From Ophelia neglecta (taxonomy: Eukaryota), in the NCBI GenBank assembly GCA_965285935.1, contig OZ260664.1:46500001-46564000 (forward strand): DNA of 64,000 nt, read 5' to 3'. Under the pieces are notes generated by a model. That model had not been told where the DNA came from and did not search any database. It saw only the letters and a list, made by a program, of their open reading frames with translations. A program made the position numbers and the translations under genes. Below are positions 3,201 to 30,785 of the stretch, piece by piece; the first letter of the stretch is position 1, and each line of letters opens with the position of its first letter.

Positions 3201-4009
3201 AAGGCTGTATGACGCATTGCAACCCTATGCATCCATCAAATAGCTTAATCTCAAATTAGTATTTTTCCCTCATAATTTACTTTCTCAGCAGCATAAGCAG
3301 TAAAACTAGAACCAATGATAATTTATCAAGCATTATCTCATAACAACACCAACATTTTTAAAGTATATTTTTGACAGCTAGAGAAAGTGGATGAAGATTC
3401 TGCCGGCACAGACCCTCCAAGTATGGTTGCCATGGTTACCAGGATTGCAGAAGGTTGGCTTTGATCCTCAGTGTTTAGCTATCTATTAAGAATGCAAAAT
3501 GTTTATTGGCAGTGCCTTTCCCCTGTTAATAACCACAGTAACAAACATGGTGTCACATCAATATCTTTGGACTTAAAATGATGGTTTGCAGGCCCTTCAT
3601 TCATTCATAAAATAGATGATGGTTGCTACAGATACAAGGGAGCCCGCATCTCCCCACAGTCCTATAACTGGAGACCTCAGAGCTTGTTTTCTGCCATACA
3701 AACACCACCTCACTCATAACTTAGCTTTTATGATAATGCCAATGACAGTTTTCATCATTTGCTGGGGTTATGATAGCTCATAGCTTTACACAAACTACTG
3801 TATTATTATGTACCCCCCCCCCCCTCCCTCCCCCTGCCTACAGCAATACTGTCATTGCCAATGAAATGCTGACCACCAATACTAATACAGTCCCATCCAA
3901 AATCCAAATCAACCTGAACAATTTCCACAATATGACTTAGTAGTTGAAGTAGTTCTGATGCTTGACTTCCTTCCTTGGTGTGTTCAAAACCAATAGTTTA
4001 TTCACTCAC

Positions 4010-4045
4010 CCTACTCCGTAATGGACCAACTTTTTCAGTACATAC
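4010..4045 (-). other. 36-nt exon / candidate recursive-splice (RS) exon
   Basis: Minus strand: ttttttctttcttttcag|GTATGTACTGAAAAAGTTGGTCCATTACGGAGTAGG|gtgagt. Open in phase 0 (VCTEKVGPLRSR) and phase 2 (YVLKKLVHYGV), stop in phase 1. Confidence 0.65.
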
Positions 4046-7000
4046 CTGAAAAGAAAGAAAAAATGACTTGAGTCAAAAGTAACATAAGAGCATGATATAA
4101 TTGAGTGTCAAAGAAGAAGTAAATACTTTCAATATTTGTTACATAAAACATATCCAAGGGTTTGCCTTTTATTTAACCCTGAATCCATTGATCAAAATAG
4201 AAATTTGCTCCAACAACATAGTCTGGACAGTATCTGGTGGCAAACCAGTGCAGCAAAATCTATCAAAATAACACAATTGTTATACAATGCATAGTTACAA
4301 GATTACAATTTATATGGCCAAAATAAATTGCTGGTGGCTGTGCCTGCATAGGGTGCCGTGACCCTTGCCCCCAGACAGATGTTATCATTTAGTGAGAGTG
4401 ATTACTGATGCAGGAGAGTTGGCGGGATGGCAGGACTCCAGATCCCAGGGATTCAGGAGCATACTATCAGTAATTTGCCGACTTTATCCTCTGAACTCAC
4501 TACATCAATAACCATTCAGAGTTTTAAAGTAATTGATAAATACACCACTATATTATGGCATTGACCCAAGCGACTACATGTTTACACATTAGAGACTGGA
4601 GACCAGTTTGACTTGGGGATATGATGTATTTCCAGGACAGACTACCCAGCTAATACCACAACAAAGCAATCAATAAAAAGAATAAATATCTACACTGATT
4701 TTCAAAAGCTTCTCTGCCATCAACCTCCCCATTTCTTAATGAAATCACCAAACTCTAATGGTGAAAAAACTGGGAGAATGGCCCTTGAGCTCTGACTGAT
4801 GTCTCAGTGAATTACTTGACTGTGAAAATGAACAAAGCAAGCTGGAAGACATGAAATAACATATCAATCACCGGCAAAAAATAGAAACCTGGAAAATGTG
4901 GGGTGTAAAATGGCAGCGGGAGGAAAGCATTATGTTAGTAGTGTGTAACGTAGCATGCAGAAAGGAGCTAGGCGGGTCAGAGCAGGCTCCCTTAAACAAA
5001 TAGCTCTTCCTTGCCACTGTCCCGCTGGGTGCTGCGGGTGCTGGCAGCCAGATCCTGTTCCCTTCTTGCACCCCGTATGAAGACATCCTGCTGCGAGTCA
5101 GCCAGCCGGCCATGAGCCATCCCGCCAGCTAGCTTAGACACAACAGAAAATTACAATAAAACTGGCCCACTTGTCAGCTATAAGCTCCTATACATTTCAA
5201 TACTGACATCCAATAGAGGCCAAGATTAAGACCTAGTCAAAGGTGATCACCTGAGCTGGCAGCACACACAAACTGATCTGCCAAGCCACCACATATTGGT
5301 GTCGGCCATTTCTCATTTCTTGAAAAAACAGAGCTTGATCTGTATTTATTGTCTTTATTAAATTCAAATTATTTCATCAGTAAATGTATAATAATCCAAT
5401 AAACAGCTTGAGGGAAATTCAAATGATGTCAATATCAATAATATTTCTCTCTTCCCTGTGGAAGACTTTGAAGAAATATAAATTTATATCATGCTACTTC
5501 CTACACTTTAAGCAGAGGAATATTTTTTTTCTAGTAATGAACATAAAAGCAATCAGAAAATAGGCAGAAAGAAGAGCCTTTTGCGTAGAACCAACAGGTT
5601 TTGTAGATGTTACAACCCTAGCACTCTGTGAAAACATGGGCAAAGACTAATTCAGAAGTCAATTTTGAGTCCGTCAATTTAGATTACCAATGTACATGTA
5701 TTCTTTGATAAGAAAGGAGAGTTTTTTTTACCTGTAAGTCACATCATAGTCCATAACTTTTGTTAAATTCTGAACTAACTTAGGATCCCTGCAGTCCATA
5801 TGCCTCATGAACTGACAGGAAACTGGAAATACCTGCACCTAGTTTTAGTTCTGTACTTTCACTAAGGATATTTATCTTGAGTTGAGTGGGTAAACATTAT
5901 TCTCACCAAAATTAGTGGTCGTTTTTAAACAAGCATGTTGAAAGCAGTTACCATCAATACGCATTTCAATCATTTGTGGAAATAGCCAAGTTTTTTACTT
6001 GTGCACATAGCAGTTTGATGTTGCAGGGCGGAGACAGACAGAGCTGGTATGTGGAGGGGGCTTTGTGAGGACAGAAGGGGTTGCCTGTCTGAAGAGCTTG
6101 CCAACAGACCAATACTCCAACAACAGCTGACTTTAGGGGCTTTTATACAATCATCATCGTGCCATCATCATCAGCCATAGCTCACTCATTCCACTAGCAT
6201 TCCTTCTCTAATCTACCATCCCAATGATGGATCTCCGCTCAATTTCTGCAGCGTTTATACAAAATTCATGAGCTTCGCGGCAACTTGTTGCCATTGCCAG
6301 GCAAATATAACATGAAATGGTATGGCTTGGCCGTTGCTGATTTTCAGCCATCTTATCACCCCATTGGGTCATTCATTAGAGCACATTAGGGCACACTCAG
6401 TATCCCCAATTCTAAGCCCATCTCCCAGTGAGTTCTCTGTGCCAGGGGAGCTAGGGAGCCTGTGCGATGCTATTACGCTCCTTGGTTTGTCTAGCTCTGA
6501 TCTGCACCAGCCAACAACTACCTTTGGGGAATGTGCTTGAACTTTAAATATGCAACAGCCATGCAAGACATTGGAGTCTATGACCAAATGTAACCTACTA
6601 GCACACAGGAAAACGTTGATTGAGTTTGTGTTCAACCCTTCTTGGAGTTTATCCCGACAGTAAAAGGCCGAGGTCGCTCACCCAGCTTATACATCTTTAA
6701 TATGCCTACATTGATTTACTATTGTTTGCATATTTATTCTTGTTCCGAGATTCAGGAAATAAATTTCAATGTGAATTTTGTGGTGCTTGGGCTTAAGCAA
6801 GCAATGTGCCCCAGCTTTCAATATTAGTAGCATCATTTTACTTCTTTTTATCTTAGACTTATGACAGTTAAAAAAAAACCCACACCATAATTAAGGCTGA
6901 TAAGGTGAGAAGACTGTAACAGAACCTGCTGGTATGGCATAGAGCTCCACCTGGCCCCCACCACATAAAACAAACACCTTCTGCATCCTAGTCAGAAAAC

Positions 7001-8111
7001 TTATCTGCCTGCTTCATAAAACTAAATTGCTCAGCTTATAAGATGACCCCAACTAGTGGCTGATGGGCTAATAATAAAGAAATGATGGTTGGTTCTATGG
7101 CTTTACCAAACGTAGAGATTATAGTCAATTGGGACCCCTGGGAGAACACCTGCGGCTGACAGGGCTATTCAGCAGAAAGAAATTTGATAAATAAACAAAT
7201 GAATAAGTATATAAATAATTAGAAACAAGGGCCAAAAGGCCTCAACAATGGAATTACGGGGCCAGGCAGAGGGTTTGTCTAGGAAGAGTACATAGCAGCA
7301 ACTAATGATATGCAATAAGCTACAATTGTACCCGTGTGGCGGTCTGAGTTAAGCGGTCTGATTTTAGCGGTCTGATTGTACCGATCGGTCTGAGGTTACT
7401 AGTAGGTATTATCTGCAAATAAACAAAGAAAGTCACTGTCCATGCAAATATCTCTTCCACAATGGCACATGGTTTTAGCAAATTAAATTGGCAGAAATTA
7501 ATATCATGCAGTTGATTGTTTTGACATAGTGGCCCTTACATTTAAATAAATTCCATATAAAACATAAAAATATTCTATATGTGTCACTACAATCAAGTAG
7601 CTAGGGACTTAATTTAGCCAGTTTTCAGAGTAGCAAAAAATTGCTTTATACATGTTGTTTACGATTGATACTTTCCAGATGACGAAAAAGGCACAACCCC
7701 TCCCATGTGAACCAAAAATATTTTTAGAAATATTTGCGGAACAACTCTCAGGTTTCTATTAAATAGCAGTACCCTCCCAGGACGAAAAGTTCATCATTGA
7801 CCAAGAGCAGCACAAGCAAAATGTACACTGGGGCAAAGTGTTATTCTATATGCTCTGATCGTAACTAAAATGACTAGCAGAGATGTAAATTTTTCCTTTT
7901 ACAGAGTTTATATGTGAAAGAAATGTTAAAATGTTTTGATATTAATGAAAATATGTTCTCCTCCGACAAAATATTGTGTGTTGACATATGGATAGGAAAC
8001 AGTGTCTGCGCATGCGCTCCTACTTAAAAGGAAGTGCCATAATTAAATCACAGTATAGCACTTGAATTAAGGTATTATCCCTCCTTCTATACATCAAACC
8101 TCAAACAAAGT

Positions 8112-9062
8112 GGGGGCACCCCTCTGACACCTCACATAGTTAGAGAGTGGTCCTCTGGGGTTTACTGGGGCACCCCTCTGAGACACCTCACATAGTTAGA
8201 GAGTGGGTCCTCTGGGGTATACTGGGGCACCCCTCTGAGACCCCTCACATAGGTAGAGAGTGGTCCCCTGGGGTATACTGGGGCGCCTCTCTAAGACCCC
8301 TCACATAGTTAGAGAGTGGTCCTCTGGGATCTACTGGGGCGCCCCTTTGAGACAACTCACATAGTTAGAGAGTGGTCCTCTGGGGTATACTGGGGTGCCC
8401 CTCTAAGACCCCTCACATGGTTAGAGAGTGGTCCTCTGGGATATACTGGGGCGCCCCTCTGAGACACCTCACATAGTTAGAGAGTGGTCCTCTGGGATAT
8501 ACTGGGGCACCCCTCTGAGACACCTCACATAGTTAGAGAGTGGTCCTCTGGGGTATACTGGGGCGCCCCTCTGAGACCCCTCACATAGTTAGAGAGTGGT
8601 CCTCTGGGGTATACTGGGGCGGCCCTCTGAGACACCTCACATAGTTAGAGAGTGGTCCTGGGGTGCCCCTCTGAGACACCTCACATAGTTAGAGAGTGGT
8701 CCTCTGGGGTATACTGGGGCGGCCCTCTGAGACACCTCACATAGTTAGAGAGTGGTCCTCTGGGATATACTGGGGCGCCCCTCTGAGACCCCTCACATAG
8801 TAAGAGAGTGGTCCTCTGGGGTATACTGGGGCGGCCCTCTGAGACACCTCACATAGTTAGAGAGTGGTCCTCTGGGATATACTGGGGCGCCCCTCTGAGA
8901 CACCTCACATAGTTAGAGAGTGGTCCTCTGGGGTATACTGGGGCGGCCCTCTGAGACACCTCACATAGTTAGAGAGTGGTCCTCTGGGATATACTGGGGC
9001 GCCCCTCTGAGACACCTCATATACATGTAGGTCGAGAGTGGTCCACTGGGGTGTACTGGGCC
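8112..9062. repeat. 56-bp minisatellite, ~17 copies
   Basis: Unit ggggcgcccctctgagacacctcacatagttagagagtggtcctctggggtatact. The period of 56 is seen at 8448/8504; one shortened unit near 8660. Confidence 0.97.
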
Positions 9063-9561
9063 ATTCCACTTAAGATACATGTACATGTACACAAGTATCA
9101 GTATTAGTGCTGCATTCTAGTTTATAATCACAACATTTATCTGCTACTTCTCAGCAATACAACCTCCCACTCAAATTGTGGCCACCTCAATAAATTATCC
9201 ACTAAAATAGTGGCTAATGCTATAAAAAAAAAAGAGCAACTACCACAATGAAATAGCTGCCTACGCTGCCAACACAACTCTGCAGTTCCAAATTCGCTAG
9301 GGTATGAACAAATGCCATGCCGTGTGAGGTCATTGAAAACAATCTAGACCTGCTGCTTTTTATAATACTGCTTTGCCATAAGCAATATATCCAAGGAATC
9401 AGTACTAAAAACTGAACCAAGTGCTTTCTGGTTTTATGATCTAAGATGCATAAAAGTGGTGCTCCATAAACTTCCAGGAACTGTATCTCTTTACACACTA
9501 AACTGCCAGTAGTGCTTTGCCTGACACACATAAATGCCCCATCCACAAAGTTTAATGTTAC

Positions 9562-9641
9562 CATTGTCCGTGGATTCCTTTGTAGATGCCTTCCTTGTCA
9601 GCCACTTAGATGCTATTGAGTTGCTTTCAGTGGCTTTGATT
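9562..9641 (-). CDS. candidate 80-nt internal coding exon (IKATESNSIASKWLTRKASTKESTDN)
   Basis: Branch-like tactaat, acceptor attttctag, donor G|gtaaca. It is open only when entered in phase 2; the other two frames have stops. Confidence 0.35.
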
Positions 9642-12104
9642 CTAGAAAATATTCACACATTAGTAAGATAATACAATTTTATGGTGGAGAAATACCAACC
9701 AGAGTGAACTGCAATCAATACTAGCTGGCTGTACAGAATACACAAGGCACTGGTGATCTACTTTCTATCATCAATTTCCAGGCCATACAACAACCCATCA
9801 GTGCATTTTTTTTAAATGTATGAGAAGTTCTTATCCATCAACAGATGCTCCGCAGACTTAGATCATTGCCTGAGTTAAGATAATTATGACAGAAGATATT
9901 GCCTACTGCAGTATAATTATAAAAAGCAATTTGTTCACACCATCAAGAACAGTGACATGTTAGTACTGGCCCAGTTTTTTTCCTGTCACTGGTTTATTGG
10001 CTGGAAAAAAGGCCAAAGGCTGTGAGCGTACTAGGGAAAAGCACCAATTTTAGAGCATACATGCTAGAGACACGCACTGTTTAAATTATATGGCATGGTT
10101 CATGAATAGTTGATGATCGATCCTCATTTACACATTCCTCGGGGAGTGAAAAGGTGTCCACACAACAACTTTATTAAATGAAAACCACTCTTCTCAAAGG
10201 GTATGCCAACTATCCCACAACATTCAAAATAGAGTGTCCATAAGGGTACTTTTTATATAAATATACCATTTTTATTATCTCCAAAGCACACACTTACATA
10301 TAATAATACTTAGAATTTCTGTTAACAGTTTTACACAAAATCAACACAAGGGAAAGATGATTTATTGCATAAATTAGTATTTTGCATAAAAAAACAACTT
10401 TTGGGTTGACAAATGTTATGTATGCATCACCTCATATCCAACCTACCTGAGTCAATATAAGATTCTACCATGGACTATGCAATTCATATTCATTTCCATG
10501 TCAGTTTTAGATTATTATGATCAAGTAGAGCGAAGGTGATATACAACATGAGAAATGGGCCGGCTTCATGTTTTATAATCATCTCATTCTTCATTTGCTA
10601 TCATAAAAATACTAACTGAAAATCAATGTACCATATGTAGTCAGATTGTTAAATCCAAAAAATTCTGGCAATGTTGTTATTTATGGGCAATATCAAATTT
10701 TGTGATCAGTAATAAAGACAATTCATGCTGCTGCGCGATGGGCCAAAGGCAGAGAAAGTCCATCTTATTTAATCCCTCAGTTGTCTGACATTATGGGACA
10801 TTAACAATCTGCCCGGGGCCTGGTGCTGGGACTTCACTCCTGTCCAAGCCTTCAAGCTCAATTGCACACCTGAAAACTTGAGTAATGTATCATAATACAT
10901 CTCCTGGAATGAAACCAAATTAATGTGAGTTGCAAAGAGAGCAGCATAAGGAAGAGTTGATGGCTCACTAGGGCGTTGCTGGAGTAATGTAGGACAAATT
11001 TGGCTGTATGATACTGATACGGAGGTGTACACATGTACATGACACACTGGAGATGGCATGCATACTATTGAGGATAATGAATTAAGCCATCCAGGTATCC
11101 AAGCCCATGCCTTTCCACTTATCTCTTCTTCTTTATTGGATCTAGAAGTTTGCTCAATTGACTGATTCAGAGCTGAATCGATTCAGCTCAACTCCCTGAT
11201 GTCTTCATTGAAATAACCTGAGCGACCCAAAAGATTTCAAACAAAACCATCAGCAAGTATTGTCAGAAAGTCCAGAGCCTTCTTCTGACATCCAATTTGT
11301 AGCAGACATTGTTATCTAGACTTGAGCCCCAGCCTGATCAATCAGGCGGGCATTGAGATTGGGCCGGGCAGGAGGCCCCTCTGACAGCGGCACACTCTAT
11401 CTCAGGCCACCATCTCTTATGTCAGACATCAGCCCCTGACAGCTAACTTCACTTCTAGTCAATACTGCCAGCGTCTATCTGCTAGCATCTGATTTAACAA
11501 AGTTAACCCTTTTGTACTACTATACTATATTTTTCCAGCTTACATAGGGATTCAGCCAATGTTCGGGCAGCCAGCTAACATTGCTCTATCTGAGCTGGCA
11601 GGCATTGACCTGCACCAATGACCTGTACACTGTGCCTGCACACACACAGAGGGGTTAGCCTAAGGACAGATTGTTCTCCATTGTTCTTGTCATTAGAAGC
11701 CTTGCCTAGATCACAGGAGACACTGTGGCCTGATGGTCCAGCAGCTCAATGCACTCACTCACTTGTGCCTATCTAGTCCCAATGAGCCAGACCAATGTCG
11801 ATGGAATTACACCCCAGAGACTAATAGTACATAAAACATTTCCAGCATGTCCAATATATCTGACAGAATTAAATGCTGACAATTCAAGCACTGATTTTTA
11901 TGGGAAGGACAGATTGGCCTTCCAGTGCTTGTTATGGTCTAAACTTTTGGATGAAGTGAAATTTATGTTTGTTATAGTCACATGGAATTCACAATTGAAT
12001 AATGCAGGCAGGGAAACTTGCTGAGATTAACGCATAAAGTTGTCTCCCAGAAACTGTTCAGCCATTGTAAGAGTGTGGAAGGTACATCCAGAAACATGAG
12101 GAGT

Positions 12105-12410
12105 AGATACAGGGAGAGTGCTGGCAACACAGCAGAGAGTGCCAGCGGTATAGTACGTATAGTACGGGAGGGGGGGGGGGGGGGGGGAGATTGCAAGCAG
12201 AACAGGGGAAGATAGCCTAATACAGAGGAGAGTGCCAGCGGTACAGCAGAGAGTGCCTAGTACAGTCATTGGAGAGTGCCTAAATAGCGGAAAGTGCCAG
12301 CAGTACAGGGGAAAATGCCAGTAATACAGTGGACTTGTACAATACAGATGAGTGTCTGTAGTACAGCTGAGAGTACCTAGTGAAGGGGGTCAGGGGAGAC
12401 ACTGGCAGCT
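12105..12410. repeat. degenerate ~20-bp tandem repeat (tacagcagagagtgccagc) with G run
   Basis: Recurring gagagtgcc/tacag units; G run at 12170-12188. Confidence 0.7.
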
Positions 12411-13756
12411 CAAAGACAGCTGTCTCAATAATCCCTGGCTGTAACCGGGATATCACTAGAGTAAAACACTGTAACGGCAATGGCAAAGCCATCAATCAGA
12501 TAGCAAACATCTTTGTCCAGTTGCTGTGTGTATTGTGACAAACATTGTGACAGTTAACAATGCATTATTTGGCAAATTCCGACAGCATATTCACTGTACA
12601 AGCTAAATTGGGTTCCTTTTCTGGCTTGTTTTTTTTCAGCAGGAAATGCTCTGCAAACGAACTGCATACAAAAAGAGTAAATGTCATGTCCCGACAGCAT
12701 TATGTGGCCTTGCCGCCCAGCTTACCAGAGGAGGAATGAATTTCATTAAATCTATATTCATCCATCCTGTCCTCAACCTCGAAAACTTCAGGGGAATAAA
12801 CAAAGTGCTAACAAGCACTGCAAACAGAGGCAACACCATGAACTGGCAAGGTCAAAAAGTCACATAGAATATTTCACTATTTAACCATTACCACCAGTTG
12901 TCCAATGATATAGAATGACAAATATTGTATATTTTTGAGAAGGCAACAACCTTATCATTATTACAATAATATAAAAATTTGTACTTAGCACACATCAATA
13001 ATGAGGTACTGATGTGTGCAATTTACTTTAATAACATAAAATGCAGCAAATATTTATATATGAAATAAAAAATGAAAAATCCAATAAGTATCAAGAATGT
13101 ATAATGAAAAATCCCATAACTATCAAGAATGTATCAAGAAATTATCAGATTTAAGGCAGACAGTAGATTTATTGGACATTCCACTGCTGACAACGTTCTT
13201 AAATGGTTTATTCTTTAATTATTGCAGTGCCACATGTTCATATTTATAAACTGTTTGCTTTCAACCAATGTAAGATATTTCATGAATTAGGAATGCATGT
13301 AAAAAGGTTCCTTTTCTCTCAGCACCTAATTTTTTTGTCATAAATCAGTTATAGTTATTTTTCAAGAAAACTAAACAAAACTCATATTTGAGGCATTCAG
13401 AATGGTGACTGAAGGGTATGGGCGCAACAGGAGATGACGCAAGTAGTGTACACAGCTATGGTTCTAGATAGAGTTTTGACATTTTTTAGTACCTTTATCT
13501 CGTACAAAAAAGACATTGGCTCACTAGAAATCTGTTCTGTATTTATCAGTATGGGCTGAAAAATGTTGGGAATGCTGAGAGGCTCCTACAACTTGGATTT
13601 GATAAACATTTTGGCATTCAACATTTTATTTTTACCTGTAACTTTAGTTGCAATGAAATAAATAAACACAAGCAAGCTATTAATCAATCAAATTTCTACC
13701 TTCACATTCATGCACACCTAATGTTCACACTGAAATAGTTACATTTGGCCAAGCTA

Positions 13757-14121
13757 TACACATAGTCTGAGTGGTTAGCACTAGCCCGCAGCCTGCACTA
13801 GCCCAACCAGCTCTCAAATGCTTTTTGCTGGAACGTTGACAATTTGTGACAGAAAATAAGTCTAACCTCTGCTAAATCTCTAGCAATGTCCACAATTCTT
13901 CAAAGTAACTATTTTGTCCCCAAAATGTGGACATGTTGCTAAATGGTTTGCAGGCATCTCCACGATTGGTCAAGAAAGGTGACTGATGGAAAACTGCTCA
14001 ATGACCATTTTATCTGACTGAATGACCTATGGCAATGTTGGTGATGGAAATTTTACTCCCAGTGAGTGGACTGTGCGGCTAGTTGCAGCAATTCATCTAG
14101 CGACTTGTAGACAGCAGTGTA
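13757..14121. mobile_element. possible decayed MITE
   Basis: Ends tacac...gtgta. The left subterminal gcactagcccgcagcctgcact resembles the reverse complement of the right agtggactgtgcggctagttgc. Confidence 0.3.
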
Positions 14122-15850: not shown

Positions 15851-16551
15851 TACAGACAGGAACAAGCAGGATTATAACAGGGAGCACATGGGGGACAGGA
15901 TTAGGAAGGAACTGAACTGGTACAGAGGGGATTGAGAAAGAACTGAGCTGGTACAGAGGAGAACAAGCAGGATGAACAGGGGGCACATGGGGGACAGGAT
16001 TAGGAAGGAACTGAGCTGGTACAGAGGGGATTGAGAAAAAACTGAGCTGGTACAGAGGGGATTGAGAAAGAACTGAGCTGGTACAGAGAAGAACAAGCAG
16101 GATGAACAGGGGGCACATGGGGGACAGGATTAGGAAGGAACTGAGCTGGTACAGAGAGGATTGAGAAATAACTGAGCTGGTACAGAGGGGATTGAGAAAG
16201 AACTGAGCTGGTACAGAGGGGATTGAGAAATAACTGAGCTGGTACAGAGGGGATTGAGAAAGAACTGAGCTGGTACAGAGGGGATTGAGAAAGAACTGAG
16301 CTGGTACAGAGGGGATTGTGAAAGAACTGAGCTGATACAGAGAAAGACGAGCAGGATGAACAGGGAGAAAACAGGGGGACCAGAAGCAGGAAGGAACTGA
16401 ACTGGTACAGAGGGATTGAGAAAGAACTGAGATGGTACAGAGACATACAAGCAGGATGAACAGGGGGCATATGGGAGATAGAAGCAGGTAGGAACTGAAC
16501 TGGTACAGAGGGGATTGAGAAAGAACTGAGCTGGTACAGAGGAGAACAAGC
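15851..16551. repeat. composite purine-rich minisatellite (31-bp core with a periodic longer spacer)
   Basis: Core gaactgagctggtacagaggggattgagaaa (period 31 at 16141/16172), interleaved with gaacaagcaggatgaacagggggcacatgggggacaggattaggaag. Confidence 0.95.
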
Positions 16552-19190: not shown

Positions 19191-19204
19191 CGGCGGCTCT
19201 TGGA
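19191..19204 (-). other. candidate 14-nt microexon, or 3' end of a longer exon
   Basis: ttctggttttgcttttgcccag|TCCAAGAGCCGCCG|gtaagg, in a locally CpG-retaining patch. Reads SKSR+ (phase 0 in, phase 2 out). Confidence 0.4.
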
Positions 19205-21387: not shown

Positions 21388-21647
21388 CTTAGAGCTCTGC
21401 GTTTCCGATGCCTTTTCTTTCTCTTTTTCTCGTTTTTTCTCAGCAGCCTTGCTTTGGCTGGTGTGAGTGAACAGTCTGGTGTCATACCAACCGCCATGCA
21501 CGATTCTAATAGTTTTTTAATAACTTTATCCGTATTTGCATTTGAGGAAGATGATTTCCCCTTATATAGATCCAAAGGATTGTAGTTCCAGCTGCTGAGG
21601 GGCTGCATCAGAGAGGTCTGGGCCGAGGACGTGGTGTCCACGTGAAG
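21388..21647 (-). CDS. candidate start-codon exon (ATG 21608; MQPLSSWNYNPLDLYKGK...KNEKKRKKRHRKRRALR)
   Basis: Acceptor ctgcccttacctcccag with ctgac upstream, open frame throughout, donor AG|gtaaat in phase 2. Ends in a strongly basic NLS-like tract. Confidence 0.65.
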
Positions 21648-21771
21648 CTGGGAGGTAAGGGCAGCCAGGGTGGTAACGGGGGAGGTCAGAGTGGGGTAAA
21701 GGGACCACCTGACTGATAGATAATACTCTATTACAGACTCTGACCTATCTCTAACACCCTTTACCACTCAC

Positions 21772-21870
21772 CACAGACGGCTTACTGACACACAATAACT
21801 GTAACCGGCTGGTGACTGCTCAGCTATACATGTACCCACAGACAATACACTTCACACAAACTCTGCCCTC
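21772..21870 (-). other. candidate 99-nt 5'UTR exon
   Basis: Acceptor tagttcctgttctgctag at 21871 and donor TG|gtgagt at 21771, flanked by 120- and 124-nt introns. It has a stop in the frame of the downstream exon. Confidence 0.5.
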
Positions 21871-21990
21871 CTAGCAGAACAGGAACTACAGGACCACCAA
21901 CAACCAGCTACAATGTCCTGCACACCAGCTATATTCCTCCACATCTGAGCAGGGAGATGTCATGGGCCACAATATTGATATCTCCCTTAC

Positions 21991-22360
21991 CAGTAATCCA
22001 CTGCTCCTCGGCTCCCAGAAAGCGCCCTATCGCTGTAACCCTATAACCAAAAGCTTATATCGCTTCACTGGTATCACTTGAATGCCATCCAAATTTGATC
22101 AATTCATTTGCGCTGGCCACTCTAGCAGGAGTGTATGGGTATGATCCAGTATGGAGATGATCGCGCTTGCTTCAGCACAGACAGCCAACTGCTGCCAGAG
22201 CACCACCACCAGCAGCAGCTGATAGTTAGGTCCCTTTACTTCCCTTACCTTCTGTTAGACCCGAAAGTGAAAGGTAACACTTGTCTGGGCTATAGTGTTG
22301 CTGCGGTCAGCAGAACGCCATGTCAGAGAGTCCGACGGGCTAGACAGGGAGTGGTGGCAG
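21991..22360 (-). promoter_or_regulatory. candidate internal promoter / non-coding leader exons (5' limits uncertain)
   Basis: Strong donors CTG|gtaagg (21990) and AAG|gtaagg (22248) within a stretch richer in CpG than the background. Confidence 0.4.
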
Positions 22361-23033
22361 CCCCTTTGACCTATAGACTTCAGGAAAGATCTGCCAACAC
22401 AGTATCCTTCTACACTCCAAAACCCTATCTCCCTTCAATCTCCACGCTACAGGCGCACTGCAATCCTCACTCAGTTCTTGAGATCACACCGCCTTATTGC
22501 TGTACTTTTAACCCCACAGTGTATTTCTGTAGTGGCAGTGGATTCTTACAGACAGGTCCTGTGGCTGTGTGCGATATGGTGCCTAGCTGGACTAGGCACT
22601 GCTGTAAAGCAAAGCCTGTCTGCAAGCCTGTTTAACCTTCAACATCCCAGCCTGCTGCTGTTCCAGCAGCTCATCCTAGTTTGTTTGCCTGTTGTCCTGT
22701 TAATCAATTGCTACCAACCCCAAGCCCTAGCCACATTACTGACTAAGTCCCCACAATGCATCATAAGCAAGTGTCTTCCCCACTGTCAGTGTTTTTTGTC
22801 AGCAATAGATGGTAATCCAGATATCACTTCCTCTGGGCATGTCAGAGGCTCTAAGTCCTAAGAATCAATTGTCCCAGGGCCCACTGGTTACCTCGAGCTC
22901 ATGACCACCATGACCTCATGACCACCATAGCTAGTTGCAGTGCCAGGGTACTAAACAGTCAAACCTCTGAGATACAGTTACAGTATACCCTAAGGCCAAA
23001 GATCAGTAATCCACTGCCTAAAACCGCTCTTAC

Positions 23034-23215
23034 CACCGCCCAAATGTATCCTTGCCGTACTTGGTGGACCACTGGGGGGAATAAACCGCACTCCACAACA
23101 GTAATATGCTACCCCTGGGCACTTTGTACATTGAGGCGCAGTGGAGGTAAACGCATTTAGCGTATAATGGTTCCTTTAAGCAAGAGGATCGAAGGTCAAA
23201 GATCACCGCTAGCAT
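23034..23215 (-). CDS. candidate alternative first coding exon (ATG 23215 or 23131; ...KYGKDTFGR+)
   Basis: Open frame from ATG to donor TG|gtaaga in phase 2; locally CpG-rich. Confidence 0.4.
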
Positions 23216-26200
23216 CAATGTAAGTGGGATCTTCTTGAGCTGATGTGCAGAAACGTGTTGCGTCAATAAAATTATTTAAGTATCAGTAAACACAAACAGC
23301 TTTAGTAAATTGCCAACAGATTAAGTCAGGTGTGTCTATCTGTGTTGCCACTCAGTCCACAACATTCAGCTATCTTTTGAAAGTCAATTTGACATGAGAA
23401 TATTCTATTTCCATGCCTTCCGGTTCCATCTGTCAGGAGTGTGGGCCAAGGCATGGACGACAAGTCTGGGAGTAGACAGGTACCAGATGTCTGTCGGTCT
23501 TTGGTGACACTGTGGCTGCTTTTAAATACTCTCCTTCCTGGCTTCTGGCTCTCTTTGTCAGGTGAACACAGTCCCGGAGCAAGCTTCCCACGCTACTTAG
23601 TTTGTCGCCTCAAATCATGGACTGAAAGTCATGCCCAGGTTCTAGCTACACCTACAAGCAAATAGCAAGCAATCGGCACTGTTTTAAGTCAACACAATAT
23701 TTAGTCTGTTAGGCACCTGGTGACGAGCTGCCAATGTAAAGAAACACTGCACACTGCAGTGGTAATGTTCAGTCACAATGTGTGATCTATTGTCCCAGGG
23801 AAGTATTGCTACACCTTGCGCCTCCTGCCTAGTGATACAATAAGGCAGGTTTTGTAAGGTTTTATATATTTCTGTCAAGTAGAGAAGCACCACATGAAAA
23901 CCAGACCTGGCTTATCCCCTGCTACTCTGCCAACCTATTTTTTGCCTGTAGATAAATATATATTTACCAAATGGTGAAACCTTTCAGGGAAATGTAATAG
24001 AGTGGGTATGGTGCTGATTACAGAGAATAAGGTCTCATGTGAACAGAGGAAATGAATGCTTGGTTGGGACTTCAAAGTATCAGGTCAATTGAAATTCAAG
24101 TTATTATAAAAGATAATACTAAGCATATTTGTACTTGAGACCAATTCTTATTTTCATTACTGGTATTATTATAAAATTGTTGCTAGGGTTTTGCAGCAAG
24201 TCACATCTTACTACAAGTTGATTTGATATATTCCTATCAGAGTATAATCCTCCAGGTCTCTATAACTGGACATGTTAATTGTTTCTCGATCATCATCTCT
24301 TCCTGTATGTGTGTTTTTGTGACAATAAACTAACTGAAAGAATGCAATTAAAATATTTCAGTGTGTATTATTTTTTTGTTCTACCAGGCTTGCTCTCCCT
24401 CTAGAAGACTATTCAAACAATGAAAATCATACTTAATGATGATCAGTACCTGATGACAGCTAACAACAGCAACAGGTGAACAATATTTCCCCTGATGAAC
24501 TGCAATATGATAGGTACTCAATTAGGGACAACATTTAATCTTAGCCAAGTACAGGTATAAATGTACATCTGCTTAATATGTTGTTACCTAATCTGAGGCC
24601 GAAATTTAAAGAAAATTTGGTGTCAGAACTCATTAATAAATAAGGTCAAAATCATTACTTGATTGGTTCTTTGAACATTCTCTGAGCTTCAGTCATTTTA
24701 ACCAGAGGGAAGAGGGAATTCTGAAGAGGAATGGCTATAAGGCAGCCGGTTACTAATATATTACTTCTATATTTAAAGGTATTTTTGCACTCTATACTGT
24801 CCCTCAAACAGGGTCCCTGCCGACACAGTTAAACCCAGGCCATGGGTATCACACGTGTACAATGTCATGTGGAGTCAACATTACATTCAGACAAAATTCG
24901 GAGCCCTCTGGTCTGTGGATGATATTCTCTTAGAGTGTATCAGCAGGGGTCTGAAGGGATGCTGGTAAATATGTAAAACACAACCACTGTCCTCACTGTA
25001 TGTCTGACTCTCGTGCTATATGGAAAAACACACAATCCAGGCAGGGGCCATGTGACTGCCATCTTGGTTTACACGCCCATCATGGGACCTGCTTAGCACA
25101 GCAAACAAGGCACACCATAACGGACTAATTTGGTTACTCCCATATACATACTTGAGACAGGCTTAAAATTGGCCAAAGCAGCAATAGACTGCAGGATGGA
25201 CAAGGTGACTTCCTTTGTCAGGGCTGTGTGTGTGCATAAATGAATCAGGGGACATCAATTTCATTTGGCCATGCCAGGCTAAGGACAGCTATAGACCACA
25301 ACATGGGTATCAGGGAAATTACCACAAATGACATGTACTATATGTACATGTATAATGCCAAACTGAACTGAATTTGATTTAGATTATTATTTGTACTCTG
25401 GGCTGGTTAAACATGCATGGCCTGATATCTTATTCAACAAAGCTGAAGGCCTATTACCCTCAGTAGATACTTCATAACTATACAGGATATTTGATAGGCA
25501 ATCACACCTTCCGACCACACATGTAAAGGCTGTCCCAGCACCACAGCTGTTTGTTTCTAATATTGGCCTAGCATTCTTAAGGGGGTTAAGTCCCAGTAGT
25601 CAACAGTTAGCTTTTGCCAGCTTTGATCTCCCTAGCAAACACTCAATCAGAGGAACCAGAAAGTAAATTTGAGCTTTAGCTGATCCGAGAGCTAATGAAT
25701 CCCTCAAGAGCTCTGTTACTACAGCTTTGGAAGTGCCCCATTGAAACAAAAGTCCACAAAATACAATTACCAAGAAAATATTGCTTTATTTCATGGTAAA
25801 ATTATTATTATTACTGGCTTCATGATTGCTTTTTTTAGATATCTCACTAATAATCAAAGCCTAGGTTTCTCCCTCCAGGGACTTAGCCGACTCCTCAAAA
25901 GCTCTATTGACTAGCTAACCCAATGAAAAGAGCCTAATAAAGAGCCAATCATGAGAGGTCCCAGGTCGTTACCACAGGTCTAGCCACATTATAGAAGCTG
26001 AGCTTTTCTCCTATATTATCCATAGCCCACTAGCTTATTCTTTGACAGGTGCATGAATTTACCCCTTACTAAATATTTTACAGCTGGAATTTGTGCAAGG
26101 CCTTTCTAGTAATAGATCATGTGCAAACACGATGAGTGCAGCAGATAATAGACTATCAGTGATGTGTGTAATCTGTACATAAACCCTGTCTAACTACTAG

Positions 26201-29200
26201 GGGAAGAACTACACTCTCCAAGTGATAAGGCAGCATACTACTGTCAGGCCAGACGGAGTGTGGAGGAGTCGCTGAGGCATGCCGAGAGACAGACAAGATA
26301 AACAGACTAATCATACAGCACGCATTGTTAATGTGAATATTGTGTGCTAGCCTCTAATACAATGACCGTTCTCATTTTTCCCTGCCATCAATGATTGGTT
26401 TTTCCAACCCATTGTCAGCTTATGAAGGTCATATACATGGCACAAACTAACATGCAGTCTACAGAAACTTCTAATTTGCTTAATTTTACTGCCCATGGTT
26501 CTTTAAAAATAGAAGTGAAGCAGATACATCACAGATTTAAACAGGAATCCAGATGCATTAGAAATCTTAGTAAGCAGGATTTAAACCCTCGACATTAGTG
26601 TGAACATTTTTTCAAGAGACAGTAAGTGTGGTATCAATTATCCATGGTGTTTTGTTCATTTTTTCAGAGTGATATATTTACTCTATAAGCTTGTGGGTAG
26701 TGAGAACCAGATGGTGAAGATGTCACAAGACATAGATACAAGGGGTACTGTAATTGGTCAAGGATTGCACTGTCTACATACACAAATGGGGGGGGGGGGG
26801 GGGCACATCCTCACCGGAGTAGGACGGATTTCTTCACATGGTTTTTTAAAAAATTGGGTGGTTGCACATCATACTACTTTATAATGCACATGTTGCTGAT
26901 TTAGCCATGGTAGTAAAAATGTGCTTCGAATAGAAATGTCTATATTAATGGGGTCGCCATAATCAAAGATAGCTACTGAGTGCAGCTCTATATGGAGCCT
27001 ATACTATAATGCTGATCTGATGCACTAAAGATAGTGTGCCCCATACAGTGTATATGGGCAGAGATCCATTGCAATAGTAACTCTCTTCTGCCCAATATAG
27101 CTGCAATTCTGCAGCTCAATCAAAAATTGATAAAAGTTATGTATAATTTAGCATAGTTAACCTATTGTACAAGTCAAGTAAATGAATATATGATGAGTTA
27201 AAGGTAATAAACAAGCTTAACTGAATCAATCAAGACCCCTGAGTGGGCATGCTGTTTTACCTGAAGACAAAAAAAAACAATCTAAATCTAGTCTCATCAG
27301 GTGTTCCACAAGTCTAATTTGTGACTAGTCTTAAGCATGGTTGGTAAGAGTATGCCTATAAATAAATACCACTAGCATTGTGGGTCTGTGTCTCCATTTT
27401 ACCATTAATAACTGTCCAAATGAGAAGACAGTGTCAAGAAGGTACATGTATGTATTCACCACAAGAGAGCATACTCACACACAATTGTATTATTCTGTCA
27501 AAAGTCATTACCTTCAGCTGAAGTTGACATCCTTCAACTGGAGTTGAGAAGTTTGAGAATGCAGTGACTGTTGCCTTATTTACATGTATGCGTAGGAAAA
27601 TATTAAATTGTGTACCCAGACTGACAAACATTGGAAACATAGATTTAATACAGCACACTCAGCCTGCTAAAACAAGTCATTTGTTTGAGATTATCCCAGT
27701 TGATCTGTGATTTATTTTTCAAGTCCTTGCAGGACCATTTGAAAGCTTTTAAATGCAAATGGCTGCAGTAGGGTGCCTCACAAAATAACAGCCTCAAATG
27801 ACCCTCAAATGGTACTCTAACATAAAATCAGTGAAACGTCCCGGTGCTGGTTTAAGTTGATAGTTAGAAGTCATGCTATCAAGGTTGTATAGTGAGAGAG
27901 AACCACTTGAGAAGTCAGCAGCCACATCACCTTAACACTCAGGGGTTACGACCTTGGCATATTTGGCATTTGATCGAGACCATAGAAGTCTCAGTTTACC
28001 ATACCAGTTTGTTTTGTACAGCTGTTTCATTGCAGCTTATTTGTGATACATGTCAGACACAGTCTTGCAAAAACTGAGAAAAGACAAAAACATTCACTAT
28101 TATCTAAAAACTGACATAGTATAACATTTCCTAAACAGCATTCACATTCTGAAAATTTTATTGATTTAAAAAAAAAAATTGAGGTCGGTTATATCTGAGG
28201 GTAGGAATGCCTGCACTCCCCAGGCTTAATTGACCTTTTAATGCCTGGATAAACCCTGGTTATTGTTCCCTTAATGCCTGGATATGAACGGAGCTAAATT
28301 GACCCACACAAAGCCTGGATATGCCCAATCTTGCTTTACATAGTAACACAGCCACAAAAAATTAAAAAAAAAACCACCTGCTCACCCCAGCTTCAGCAAA
28401 TACCTGTTGTAGCCTTATCAATTTTTTCAAAATACCAGGATCACATATGGACAGTGGGTAAAAAAAAAATCCCTGTTCAGCCCTCGCTATTTCCTTTGGC
28501 TGGTCCCTCTCCAGCCCCAACTCTCCAAGAGAGACCTTACAACACTGTCTACAAGCCCAATTATAGTGTCTATCAGTGACTTGTCTCCAGGGAGCTGGGA
28601 TTGTACAATTGGTTTGGGGGGCTGACAGCTCCAATTAAAAGTCCGTTTATAGAAAATGAAGTTAGTGATATATACATATCAATGCATGAAACAATGAAAG
28701 TAATATTCAGCAACATAATTCCCTTGGATACATAATACTCCATGCCAAGCTTTACCAATTGAAACTAACCAGTGTTTGCAGTGTTATCTTACACTCATAT
28801 ATAAATGTTAACAGTCTACTAGCTTTATTTACTTCTTACAGAAACCAGCTTGAATTTATTCTGACAATATTCCATAAGGTAAATTGCCAGTGAGGAGTTA
28901 TTGTTATGTACTTAATAATATAACATATATTTTTTTAAGATGCTATTTCTAGGAATTTTTGCAACCATCAGTTTATGAAACAATTTTTAGGAAATTGGTT
29001 AAGTATTAAATGTCTTAACAGAAATTTATGATTTGATACACAACTGTGCTTTTCAAACCATGCTGCTGGATGGAATAATCACAGTAGTAAATGCCCATTA
29101 CTTTAGCAGGAGGCTTAAATTCAGGAAAAGCAATATGGCAGGAACTCTTTCAATATGGGCAATTAATTTCTTATCTACCGAGCCATGCTGCTTTTCTTTT

Positions 29201-29476
29201 GACCTTGATAATAATACATGCAAAGGTTTTGGCCTAGCTCTCATGTATACAAAATGCCCTTCCACCTGCACCAACCACTGCGCTAATGCTCAATTTCTCA
29301 GATTATGAACACATTTTGACATTTGTGCCTCTTAATGGGAGCAATAATTTACAGGTTATATTTGATGTATGCAGAGGTTTATAGGTTTTCATTCCTAGCC
29401 AAGGCTAAATATATTGTATGAGAATTTTTGTAATTAGAGTGAGCATTTTTTAATGGTATGATATTGCCTTACTTAC

Positions 29477-29530
29477 CACCAGGGAGTCAACTCCTGTTAA
29501 CATGCTTAGGTGAAAAAACAGTATACATAC
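29477..29530 (-). other. 54-nt candidate recursive-splice (RS) exon
   Basis: tctaatcaaattttctgtttattttcag|GTATGTATAC...CCCTGGTG|gtaagt. It has branch point ctaat and an acceptor abutting a GTATGT donor; stops in phases 1 and 2. Confidence 0.6.
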
Positions 29531-30765
29531 CTGAAAATAAACAGAAAATTTGATTAGATATGATTTCTTACTTTACATTAAGGCATGTAATATTACACCT
29601 AGAATACAAAATTGTCTATTTTTCGATAACCAATCTGAATTCAATGACCGCTTTGGAAGTTAACTTTGAAAGGTTAAAGTCATTGACATACATGAAAGGC
29701 ATAATAAATATTGTCTGGTCTGTACCACATTTATTATTATGACTCATTTTACTTTGCTATTCCATCAGTTAAGATAAGAAAAAAACAGTTCAGACATTTT
29801 CTTCATTGAGACTGCAAAATGTACAAGGTACCTACAGTCATTATTAAATTCTACACTGCTGGAGTAGATTGGCTTAAAAAATATGTATTCTGTGATAATA
29901 GGAGTCGACAAGAAATGTCATCAGCTGTGTTTACAGGGAGCAGGAGGGAGAGGACAGATAAATCTAAATCAAGCTCATAACCTACAATATATATAATACA
30001 TCCTTCTCACTAGGGCACATGTACATATCGTTTAGAGTTTCTGACATAGGGGACATGTCTACAATTCTTATACACACATACATTGATCTATTCATGTCTA
30101 ATACGGAAGAACTCAGTTGACGGAGATGATCAGATGTAAATACAATATACTGTCTAAGTATGTTTAGTCTGAAGAGGTTTCTTTTCGCCCACAACCAATG
30201 CTGGTGAGAAAAGGTTATAGGTCTGTCAATACATGTTGAATATCCATTGTACATAAAATGGGAGCACTGCATGATTTGAATTCCTGATCCCTATTTATAA
30301 TGTCTTAAAGGTTAAAGCTGTCACTCTACAAAGCAGAATGAACTGCTTGTGGCAGTGATAAATGTGACTTTTTTGTTAGACAATAGTCGGATATAATATG
30401 CAAATGTTATCAGCAAAGACGTTTTATATCTGTCAGTTTTTATCTCCGAGCTCTAAAACACATATTGTGTGAAACTTGGCAGTATCAAAGAAGGCACTTC
30501 TCAGGTTCACTGCCTTGTGATCATAAAAAAACGTGCCAATTAATTATATGAAAGCAGATAAGTTTGAGATTGAACACACCCAATTTAATATTCTGTTAAG
30601 AAAGGAGACAAAGGCAGTGGTAGAACAAGGTGCAGACTCCAGCTTGAAATATCACAACTCAAAGAAACAGTTTTGCAAGGCGTTAAACCTTTGATTGAGA
30701 CCTTGAACAGAGCCAAGCCCCTGATTTCATTATGAAGGCTCCTGCCATGAAAGCCCCTGACTTAC

Positions 30766-30785
30766 TTCATGTTGTGCCACGGAAA
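30766..30785 (-). CDS. candidate 20-nt microexon carrying a possible start codon (CAAC ATG AA|)
   Basis: tctgatctttcttttcattcag|TTTCCGTGGCACAACATGAA|gtaagt. The ATG leaves in phase 2; it also reads FPWHNM from phase 0. Confidence 0.55.

What the first reader, a model, noticed from the sequence alone, without database searches (positions are those of the whole stretch)
4004..29558. Paired recursive-splicing (ratchet point + RS-exon) signatures in a probable mollusc long intron
Seen: two minus-strand sites (4046/4045 and 29531/29530) share the 14-mer TTTTCAG|GTATGTA. Each is a strong pyrimidine-tract acceptor fused directly to a donor motif, followed by a consensus donor 36 nt (gtgagt) or 54 nt (gtaagt) downstream. 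The flanks are not otherwise similar. Known: this is the AG|GT plus short cryptic exon architecture of recursive splicing in Drosophila and vertebrate long genes. Inference: this intron may be removed stepwise. I am not aware of this being characterised in molluscs.
Basis: partly seen in the sequence, partly recalled or inferred. Interest (0 to 1): 0.8.

Follow-up and report, generated by a model that had tools for sequence, protein, structure and literature searches.

The report
Recursive-splice units in CELF intron
Two short exon-like units that begin with their own splice-donor signal lie in the sense strand of a giant 5' intron of a CELF/Bruno RNA-binding-protein gene in an invertebrate. 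The same signature is enriched and clustered by strand across this genome, so the intron is probably cut out in steps, but no RNA data were available to prove it.

Summary
Two minus-strand sites, AG|GT at 4046/4045 and 29531/29530, share TTTTCAG|GTATGTA. Each is followed by a strong donor, 36 nt (GTGAGT) or 54 nt (GTAAGT) downstream. Both are single-copy and are not duplicates of each other.

The host is a CELF1/2-like (Bruno) gene on the minus strand. The sites lie 17.6 and 43.1 kb upstream of its RRM1/start-codon exon, inside a 5' intron of about 77 kb if my inferred upstream exon (donor at 63441) is real.

New here is a whole-genome test. TTTCAG|GT(A/G/T... as AAGT, GAGT or ATGT) plus a GTRAGT 31-61 nt downstream occurs at about 50 independent places. 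Scrambled-hexamer and AG-to-TG controls each give about 4. These places form 10 clusters with 19 same-strand pairs and no opposite-strand pair. GTATGT-type sites carry A/T at +7/+8, which extends U1 pairing.

This is the ratchet point plus short cryptic RS-exon architecture of flies and vertebrates. Recursive splicing is the best reading (about 0.6).

It is unproven. No RNA runs exist, the upstream exon is unconfirmed, and two distant relatives showed no such unit within 16-36 kb upstream. "Mollusc" is unverified. The scan has already flagged similar sites elsewhere in this genome (THOC2, RYK, Eph, ephrin).

The parts
29531..29558 (-). Site B 3' splice signal: branch-point-like CTAAT (A at 29554, position -24), pyrimidine tract, TT at -5/-6, and CAG ending at 29531
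   Evidence: sequence. 11/15 pyrimidines. Single copy. Confirmed in independent DNA contigs.
29477..29530 (-). Site B putative RS-exon, 54 nt. It starts with GTATGTAT, the regenerated 5' splice site (generic PWM 9.87 when preceded by CAG). It has a TAA in the frame set by the putative upstream exon and contains upstream ATGs.
   Evidence: frame analysis.
29471..29476 (-). Site B RS-exon donor, GTG|GTAAGT (PWM 9.64)
4046..4075 (-). Site A 3' splice signal: branch-point-like TTGAC (A at 4073, position -28), a 14/15 pyrimidine tract, and CAG ending at 4046
   Evidence: Single copy.
4010..4045 (-). Site A putative RS-exon, 36 nt. It starts with GTATGTAC (regenerated 5' splice site, PWM 9.87). It is open and frame-preserving (12 codons) between the putative upstream exon and the RRM1 exon.
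   Evidence: frame.
4004..4009 (-). Site A RS-exon donor, AGG|GTGAGT (PWM 9.70)
63436..63505 (-). Putative upstream exon end (inferred, unconfirmed). ATG at 63505-63503; the exon ends with CAG at 63442 in phase 2; donor GTGAGA at 63441-63436. It joins in frame to the RRM1 exon, which lies outside the window at window-equivalent -13562 to -13734 (L002:6266-6438, minus strand).
   Evidence: sequence and frame. No homologue of the ORF.
1..63441 (-). Window part of the inferred 77,003-nt 5' intron of the CELF gene. Recursive segments would be 33,911, 25,485 and 17,607 nt.
   Evidence: T>A skew on the minus strand throughout.

Best explanation
The two sites are recursive splice sites (ratchet points), each embedded in a short cryptic RS-exon, in the long 5' intron of a CELF1/2-like (Bruno) gene transcribed from the minus strand.

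Proposed path (inferred, not shown):
1. An upstream exon ending in CAG (my candidate ends at 63442) is spliced to the acceptor at 29531. The 54-nt unit is first recognised by exon definition through its GTAAGT donor.
2. The junction recreates CAG|GTATGTAT, which is used as the next donor. This discards the 54-nt unit and splices to the acceptor at 4046, where the 36-nt unit is defined by GTGAGT.
3. The recreated CAG|GTATGTAC is then spliced to the RRM1/start-codon exon 17.6 kb further on.

The roughly 77-kb intron would thus leave as about 33.9, 25.5 and 17.6 kb lariats, and neither unit normally reaches the mRNA. Both units are multiples of three, and their own donors are about as strong as the regenerated ones. 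Occasional inclusion, as with Ubx m1/m2, is therefore possible.
For: Shown:
- Complete anatomy at both sites: branch-point-like motif, Y-tract, CAG|GTATGTA, and a strong donor 36 or 54 nt on.
- They are the only two such units on the sense strand of the intron. The antisense strand has none with a donor. Markov null: mean 0.045, P(>=2) = 0.005.
- The host gene is CELF1/2-like: RRM_1 at E 1.6e-8 and human CUGBP1/CELF2 structures at E 1e-21. Its RRM1 exon has a conserved acceptor in relatives, so an upstream exon must exist.
- Genome-wide, TTTCAG|GTATGT, GTAAGT or GTGAGT followed by GTRAGT at 31-61 nt gives 24, 23 and 20 hits, about 50 independent.
- Controls are low: scrambled hexamers give 4 and 4 independent hits; AG changed to TG gives 5; a 225-255 nt gap gives 1.
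- The 50 sites form 19 same-strand pairs within 150 kb and 0 opposite-strand pairs, against a null of 0.24 each. A later search with a longer gap added members to three old clusters, all on the same strand.
- 11 of 13 GTATGT-type sites have A at +7 (background 0.40, P = 0.0013). 9 of 13 have AT at +7/+8 (background 0.095). This extends U1 pairing to offset the +4 mismatch, which argues that the GTATGT is selected as a donor.
- The minus strand has T>A in 37 of 38 4-kb bins from -72 kb to +80 kb, consistent with one long minus-strand transcription unit.

From the literature:
- Fly ratchet points have a short (about 50 nt) cryptic exon with a downstream donor. The Ubx 73-kb intron has two 51-nt RS microexons, and kuz has two evenly spaced ratchet points in about 50 kb (PMC8605326).
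- Recursive segments average 18 kb, branch points lie at -21 to -36, and TT is favoured at -5/-6 (bioRxiv 10.1101/006163).
- Drosophila bruno-3, a CELF orthologue, has splice-site pairs thought to act in recursive splicing of a 36-kb intron (PMC2767349).
Against: - There is no RNA evidence of any kind. The only public runs holding this DNA are whole-genome DNA contigs.
- The upstream exon is inferred only, and its ORF has no homologue. The strand skew continues beyond the window, so the true 5' exon may lie elsewhere.
- The regenerated donors are not clearly stronger than the RS-exon donors (9.87 against 9.70 and 9.64 on a generic, not species-specific, matrix).
- Both units are multiples of 3 and A is open in frame, which is more typical of expressed cassette exons than of fly cryptic RS-exons.
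- In two distant relatives no unit with the full architecture was found within 16.4 kb (L035) or 36 kb (L036-L039) upstream of the RRM1 exon.
- The bare AG|GTATGTA 14-mer is not enriched genome-wide.
- The scoring thresholds were chosen after seeing the sites.
Confidence: 0.62

Rival explanations
1. They are ordinary alternative cassette micro-exons (36 and 54 nt) of the CELF 5' region. They are spliced in or skipped conventionally, and the GTATGTA at their starts is never used as a donor.
For: - Strong acceptor and strong donor at both.
- Both lengths are multiples of 3.
- A is open and in frame between the putative upstream exon and the RRM1 exon.
- CELF genes of other animals have alternative 5' exons (my own knowledge).
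Against: - Two independent, non-homologous exons both starting with the same extended donor GTATGTA is very unlikely for ordinary exons.
- Genome-wide, short exon-like units starting with a donor hexamer are 3-6 times more frequent than units starting with scrambled hexamers (against 31, 41).
- The GTATGT class shows +7/+8 U1-pairing compensation.
- B carries a TAA in frame, and both units add upstream ATGs.
Confidence: 0.17
2. They are regulatory poison or decoy exons. They are recognised in order to modulate CELF output, by adding uORFs or a stop to the 5' leader or by stalling removal of the intron, rather than to help remove the intron.
For: - B has an in-frame TAA, and both units contain ATGs that would create uORFs upstream of the conserved MNSQ start in the RRM1 exon.
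- RNA-binding-protein genes often autoregulate through poison exons (my own knowledge).
Against: - This does not explain the donor at the very start of each unit or its U1-compensating +7/+8 bases.
- It does not explain the same-strand clusters of such units at 20-100 kb spacing in many loci.
- It is compatible with, rather than exclusive of, an RS-exon mechanism.
Confidence: 0.1
3. The sites are chance motifs, or lie outside the transcript because the real first exon is downstream of them, and so have no splicing role.
For: - Composite AG|GT sites without a downstream donor occur by chance at about 0.7 per intron-strand.
- The 14-mer is not enriched genome-wide.
- Many windows were read, so some chance pairs are expected.
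- The upstream exon is unconfirmed.
Against: - The strict pattern has only about 2-4 background hits in 762 Mb x 2 strands, so two in one 25-kb stretch on the gene's sense strand is not credible as chance.
- P(>=2) = 0.005 even under the loose matrix.
- The RRM1 exon has a conserved acceptor, so an upstream exon exists.
- The strand skew covers the region.
Confidence: 0.07

Closest known systems
Drosophila intronic ratchet points with cryptic RS-exons (kuz, Bx, luna and others; Duff et al. 2015, bioRxiv 10.1101/006163; Joseph et al., PMC8605326)
   Same: - A juxtaposed strong acceptor and donor in a long intron.
- TT at -5/-6.
- A short (about 50 nt) cryptic exon closed by a second donor.
- Several sites per intron on the sense strand.
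- Segments of about 18-34 kb.
- Here also a genome-wide class clustered in particular loci.
   Different: - No RNA proof here.
- The donor is GTATGTA(T) rather than GTAAGT at these two sites.
- The regenerated donor is not clearly stronger than the RS-exon donor.
- Both units are multiples of 3, whereas fly cryptic RS-exons are generally out of frame.
- The taxon is a lophotrochozoan-like invertebrate, not an insect.
- In this genome only CAG acceptors, not TAG, show the enrichment.
Drosophila Ubx 73-kb intron with RS micro-exons m1 and m2 (Hatton et al. 1998, as described in PMC8605326)
   Same: - An intron of about 75 kb carrying two short units (51 and 51 nt there; 54 and 36 nt here).
- Each unit begins with a regenerated donor.
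- Lengths are multiples of 3, so either skipping or in-frame inclusion is possible.
   Different: - Ubx m1/m2 are translated, ultraconserved and experimentally proven.
- Here B has a stop in frame, and expression and conservation are unknown.
Drosophila bruno-3 (CELF orthologue) exon 4a splice-site pair (PMC2767349)
   Same: - Same gene family.
- A pair of neighbouring splice sites inside a very long (36 kb) intron, proposed to serve recursive splicing and occasionally included as a 'nonsense' exon.
   Different: - That proposal was itself an inference.
- The intron position in the gene is not shown to be homologous.
- No sequence similarity was tested.
Vertebrate RS-exons in long neuronal genes (Sibley et al. 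2015, as summarised in PMC8605326)
   Same: - An RS-exon is defined by exon definition.
- The regenerated donor and the RS-exon donor compete.
- Inclusion would introduce a stop or upstream ATGs.
   Different: Vertebrates have few fully suppressed intronic sites. Here the genome-wide signal resembles the fly situation, with many clustered sites.

Membership tests
Intronic recursive splice site (ratchet point) with cryptic RS-exon | Juxtaposed consensus 3' splice site and 5' splice site (Yn-CAG|GTRAGT-like) on the sense strand | tested here: met
   Both sites have 11-14/15 Y, CAG, and GTATGTA (PWM 9.87). They are on the same strand as the CELF exons.
Intronic recursive splice site (ratchet point) with cryptic RS-exon | Short cryptic exon (about 50 nt) closed by a downstream 5' splice site | tested here: met
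   36 nt to AGG|GTGAGT and 54 nt to GTG|GTAAGT. Genome-wide the donor is enriched at 31-61 nt (23 hits), less at 62-92 nt (8), and absent at 231-261 nt (1).
Intronic recursive splice site (ratchet point) with cryptic RS-exon | Location inside a very long intron | tested here: inconclusive
   The sites are 17.6 and 43.1 kb upstream of an internal exon with a conserved acceptor, and the strand skew fits. The upstream exon (donor 63441) is only inferred and has no homologue.
Intronic recursive splice site (ratchet point) with cryptic RS-exon | Regenerated donor stronger than the RS-exon donor | tested here: inconclusive
   9.87 against 9.70 and 9.64 on a generic matrix. No species-specific matrix was available.
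Intronic recursive splice site (ratchet point) with cryptic RS-exon | Branch point 21-36 nt upstream of the AG | tested here: met
   TTGAC (A at -28) and CTAAT (A at -24) read. This shows motif presence only, not use.
Intronic recursive splice site (ratchet point) with cryptic RS-exon | Exon-to-ratchet-point junction reads, saw-tooth intronic read density, and lariats from the regenerated donor | not testable with these tools
   No RNA run holds or accompanies this DNA. The three runs are DNA contigs at depth about 25.
Intronic recursive splice site (ratchet point) with cryptic RS-exon | Evolutionary conservation of the AG|GT core | tested here: inconclusive
   Only distant relatives were reachable (RRM1 exon 78-85% nucleotide identity, introns unalignable). 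No full unit was found within 16.4 kb or 36 kb upstream in two of them. Closer relatives (P0001, P0003) sit on contigs that are too short.
Expressed RS-exon (Ubx m1/m2 type) | Frame-preserving length and an open frame, with presence in some mRNAs | tested here: inconclusive
   Both lengths are multiples of 3. A is open in the frame of the putative upstream exon; B has a TAA. mRNA presence could not be tested. The joined exon model was deliberately not searched.
CELF / Bruno (CUGBP Elav-like) gene as host | RRM1 with the CELF-type N-terminal motif, plus further CELF exons on the same strand | tested here: met
   RRM_1 at E 1.6e-8. Best solved relatives are human CUGBP1 (2dhs, E 9.6e-22) and CELF2 (4lmz). 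RRM2 and linker exons lie at -40.4, -45.7 and -57.2 kb.

The most novel reading that the evidence does not exclude
Recursive splicing through short cryptic RS-exons is a genome-wide system in this lophotrochozoan-type invertebrate, and so is probably ancestral to bilaterians. It has its own rules here:
- CAG-only acceptors.
- Cryptic exons of about 31-61 nt.
- A GTATGTAT donor variant that offsets its +4 mismatch with +7/+8 U1 pairing.

The long 5' intron of CELF/Bruno would then be removed recursively in both flies (bruno-3) and this lineage.
Probability: 0.5. Interest if true: 0.65.

Novelty: new member of a known kind. Interest (0 to 1): 0.55.

Why it matters
Recursive splicing has been demonstrated in Drosophila and in vertebrates. 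A full-text search found no paper treating it in molluscs or annelids.

A sequence signature that is enriched, dependent on distance, on the AG and on the donor, and clustered strictly by strand indicates that the fly-type mechanism (ratchet point plus short cryptic exon) operates outside insects and vertebrates. It gives about 50 high-confidence loci, this CELF intron among them, that one total-RNA library could test.

For the gene itself, failure to skip the units would load the CELF leader with upstream ATGs or a stop. The sites are therefore candidate points of control for a master splicing and translation regulator.

Tried and rejected
RNA evidence:
- The look-up of sequencing runs returned only three runs of one sample. 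Read laying on 26600-32500 showed them to be whole-genome DNA contigs at depth about 25. They confirm the assembly at site B but give no splicing information.

Gene finding:
- Pfam on long ORFs in the window gave nothing. The gene was found only by reading short minus-strand ORFs in fetched flanks.

Upstream exon:
- The word search with the 78-aa ORF found no homologue, so the exon remains an inference.

Cross-species conservation:
- RRM1-exon ORFs of relatives were found.
- I walked upstream on their contigs. One contig starts 2.3 kb upstream (L033). One ends 16.4 kb upstream (L035). One was followed 36 kb upstream (L036-L039). Three others had no DNA on hand.
- No unit with the full architecture turned up. 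The introns are unalignable, so this is inconclusive.

Other points:
- Duplicate origin of A and B is rejected. A repeat or transposon origin is rejected.
30766-30785 is a 20-nt pseudo-exon-like unit of a kind expected by chance.
Exons were searched separately.
- The large all-protein search was not used because the protein is not in doubt.


Full report
OBSERVATION

On the minus strand, TTTTCAG|GTATGTA occurs twice.

- Site A has its AG ending at 4046. A 36-nt segment follows, then GTGAGT at 4009-4004.
- Site B has its AG ending at 29531. A 54-nt segment follows, then GTAAGT at 29476-29471.
- Each has a good pyrimidine tract (14/15 and 11/15), TT at -5/-6, and a branch-point-like motif: TTGAC with its A at -28, and CTAAT with its A at -24.
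- Both sit in single-copy DNA. A dispersed repeat starts only about 70 nt downstream of site B.
- The two flanks are not homologous, so the shared 14-mer is not a duplication.

WHAT GENE THIS IS

The window has no long coding ORF with a Pfam hit. In 100 kb fetched downstream, short minus-strand ORFs spell a CELF/Bruno protein.

- The RRM1 exon (L002:6266-6438, minus strand) starts with a conserved MNSQ...PDPDAIKMFVGQIPRS.
- RRM2 and linker exons lie at about -40.4, -45.7 and -57.2 kb in window-equivalent coordinates.
- The RRM1 exon hits RRM_1 (E 1.6e-8). Its best solved relatives are human CUGBP1 and CELF2 (E about 1e-21).
- It begins after a strong acceptor, and that acceptor is conserved in relatives' genomic ORFs. 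It is therefore an internal exon, and an upstream exon must exist.

My candidate upstream exon ends at 63442 (CAG|GTGAGA) and has an ATG at 63505. It joins in frame to the RRM1 exon. With it, the intron is 77,003 nt, and the sites cut it into 33,911, 25,485 and 17,607 nt.

This exon is inference only. Its ORF has no homologue. The T>A skew on the minus strand runs from -72 kb to at least +80 kb, in 37 of 38 bins, so the transcript may start beyond the window. Either way the sites lie 17.6 and 43.1 kb upstream of an internal exon, on its strand.

IS IT MORE THAN CHANCE, LOCALLY?

I scored sites with a generic splice matrix, requiring Y >= 11/15, YAG, and a 5' splice site score >= 9.

- The sense strand of the intron has exactly two composite sites, A and B. 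Both have a strong donor within 90 nt.
- The antisense strand has one composite site, with no donor.
- An order-3 Markov null gives a mean of 0.7 composite sites and 0.045 with a donor. P(two or more with a donor) = 0.005.
- The thresholds were set after seeing the sites, and many windows were read. On its own this is only suggestive.

IS IT MORE THAN CHANCE, GENOME-WIDE?

The bare 14-mer is not enriched (24 copies against 20 for its reversal). Of its 11 copies with a good pyrimidine tract, however, 6 have GTRAGT 36-58 nt downstream. The expected rate is about 3% per site, giving P about 5e-7, or 1e-4 without our two sites.

Strict whole-genome patterns then gave the following.

- TTTCAG+GTATGT, gap 25-55, GTRAGT: 24 hits against 2 reversed. 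These are 13 unique sites plus one 11-copy gene-family exon.
- The same with GTAAGT: 23 against 5.
- The same with GTGAGT: 20 against 0. These are 13 unique sites plus one tandem array.

Controls were low.

- Scrambled hexamers GATTGT and GAATGT gave 4 independent hits each.
- CAG changed to CTG gave 5 hits.
- A gap of 225-255 gave 1 hit.
- A gap of 56-86 gave 8 hits.
- TAG acceptors gave 3 hits against 17 for the reversed control, so there is no enrichment.

The signal therefore needs the AG (specifically CAG), a donor hexamer right after it, and a second donor about 31-61 nt on.

CLUSTERING BY STRAND

The 50 independent strict sites form 10 clusters. There are 19 same-strand pairs within 150 kb and no opposite-strand pair, against a random expectation of 0.24 each.

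- Most clusters are not sequence duplicates. Several mix donor types, for example C7:83,950,249, 83,992,842 and 84,099,659, all on the minus strand.
- The later gap-56-86 search added same-strand members to three existing clusters. One result is three sites about 39 kb apart at C5:14.04-14.11 Mb.
- Clusters of sense-oriented units 20-100 kb apart are what multi-step recursive introns look like in flies (10.1101/006163; PMC8605326).

EVIDENCE THAT THE GTATGT IS SELECTED AS A DONOR

- Of the 13 GTATGT-type sites, 11 have A at +7 (local background 0.40, P = 0.0013).
- 9 of the 13 have AT at +7/+8 (background 0.095).
- The GTAAGT class has A at +7 in only 7 of 23.
- +7 A and +8 U extend pairing to the 5' end of U1 snRNA (established knowledge). 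This looks like compensation for the +4 mismatch.
- It also explains why A and B share a 14-mer without being related: both fit one constrained consensus.

MECHANISM (INFERRED)

1. The upstream exon is spliced to B, which is recognised through its 54-nt unit and GTAAGT donor.
2. The regenerated CAG|GTATGTAT is then spliced to A, which is defined through its 36-nt unit and GTGAGT donor.
3. The regenerated CAG|GTATGTAC is then spliced to the RRM1 exon.

If a unit's own donor wins instead, B adds a TAA in the upstream frame plus upstream ATGs. A adds 12 in-frame codons and also an upstream ATG, ahead of the conserved MNSQ start.

The generic scores of the competing donors are nearly equal (9.87 against 9.64 and 9.70). 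I cannot say whether the units are fully cryptic or sometimes expressed, as Ubx m1/m2 are.

WHAT COULD NOT BE SHOWN

- RNA. No RNA run is available. The three runs are DNA contigs. They confirm site B and show about 1% haplotype differences nearby, none listed within the unit, which is not significant.
- Conservation. Relatives reachable through the RRM1 exon are distant (exon 78-85% nucleotide identity), with unalignable introns. No full unit was seen within 16.4 kb or 36 kb upstream in two of them. Closer relatives are on contigs that are too short. This neither supports nor excludes conservation.
- Context of other clusters.
- Taxon. It was not established here. The nearest named hits are a bivalve, ticks and amphioxus at 75-79%. 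Another agent calls the genome probably annelid.

COMPARISON WITH KNOWN SYSTEMS AND NOVELTY

The anatomy matches fly ratchet points with short cryptic RS-exons and vertebrate RS-exons. The closest single analogue is the Ubx 73-kb intron with two RS micro-exons. Within the same gene family, Drosophila bruno-3 has splice-site pairs proposed to act in recursive splicing (PMC2767349).

No paper in the searchable library treats recursive splicing in molluscs or annelids. I file the finding as a new member of a known kind.

The scan has already noted similar candidates in this genome, in THOC2, RYK, ephrin, Eph, and a pair with 48-nt cryptic exons that seems to match my C5:14.04/14.07 Mb hits. This site is therefore one of a class rather than a singular oddity.

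Noticed in passing
Whole genome G000 (outside the window): C5:87523562-87609670 (-), C5:14035651-14114453 (+), C7:83950249-84099716 (-), C8:6300540-6447031 (-), C8:80398421-80525366 (-), C1:97653622-97708347 (-), C2:10700523-10805459 (+), C2:18750415-18785878 (+), C9:6943599-6981871 (+), C12:5714399-5722231 (-): Same-strand clusters of 2-4 ratchet-point-plus-short-exon units spaced about 8-150 kb apart. They are likely multi-step recursive introns in other genes.
   Followed up: partly
G000:C2:11793226-12750973 and C2:21002077: Eleven copies of a 32-nt exon-like unit starting GTATGTTGC and ending ...GAAGATG|GTAAGT, spread over about 1 Mb. This is probably a tandemly expanded gene family with an ordinary short exon. 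It inflates the GTATGT pattern count.
   Followed up: no
G000:C8:82805485-82805795 (+): A tandem array of a 29-nt unit that itself holds TTTCAG|GTGAGT and AAG|GTAAGT. It is a splice-site minisatellite of the kind other agents reported in this genome.
   Followed up: no
window 31900-32200 and 52130-52440: A very high-copy dispersed repeat, with summed contig depth up to about 1e6. A second copy lies in the same intron (shared ORF peptides). It is also present at 70-77% identity in a distant relative's CELF intron. Rfam gave no match.
   Followed up: partly
window 8113-9023, 15898-16442, 16831-17415, 35620-36155, 44844-45389, 52463-53208: Six minisatellites (units of 28-210 nt, 4-19 copies) inside the intron. 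They explain the long repetitive 'ORFs' at 15645-16767.
   Followed up: no
window 30766-30785 (-): A 20-nt pseudo-exon-like unit: a strong acceptor (tttcattcag), then 20 nt, then GTAAGT.
   Followed up: partly
L003:8043-8144 (-), window-equivalent -21957 to -21856: The only intronic-looking island conserved in relatives (80-88% identity). It is most likely the next coding exon (second half of RRM1), which would make intron 2 about 8 kb.
   Followed up: partly
window-equivalent -72000 to +80000 (L001-L012 plus the window): Continuous A>T skew on the + strand (T>A on the gene's sense strand) in 37 of 38 4-kb bins. It continues past the putative first exon at 63.4-63.7 kb, so the transcription unit may start upstream of the window.
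   Followed up: partly
Whole genome G000: TAG acceptors fused to GTRAGT with a nearby donor are not enriched (3 against 17 for the reversed control), whereas CAG acceptors give 43. The class appears to require CAG.
   Followed up: yes
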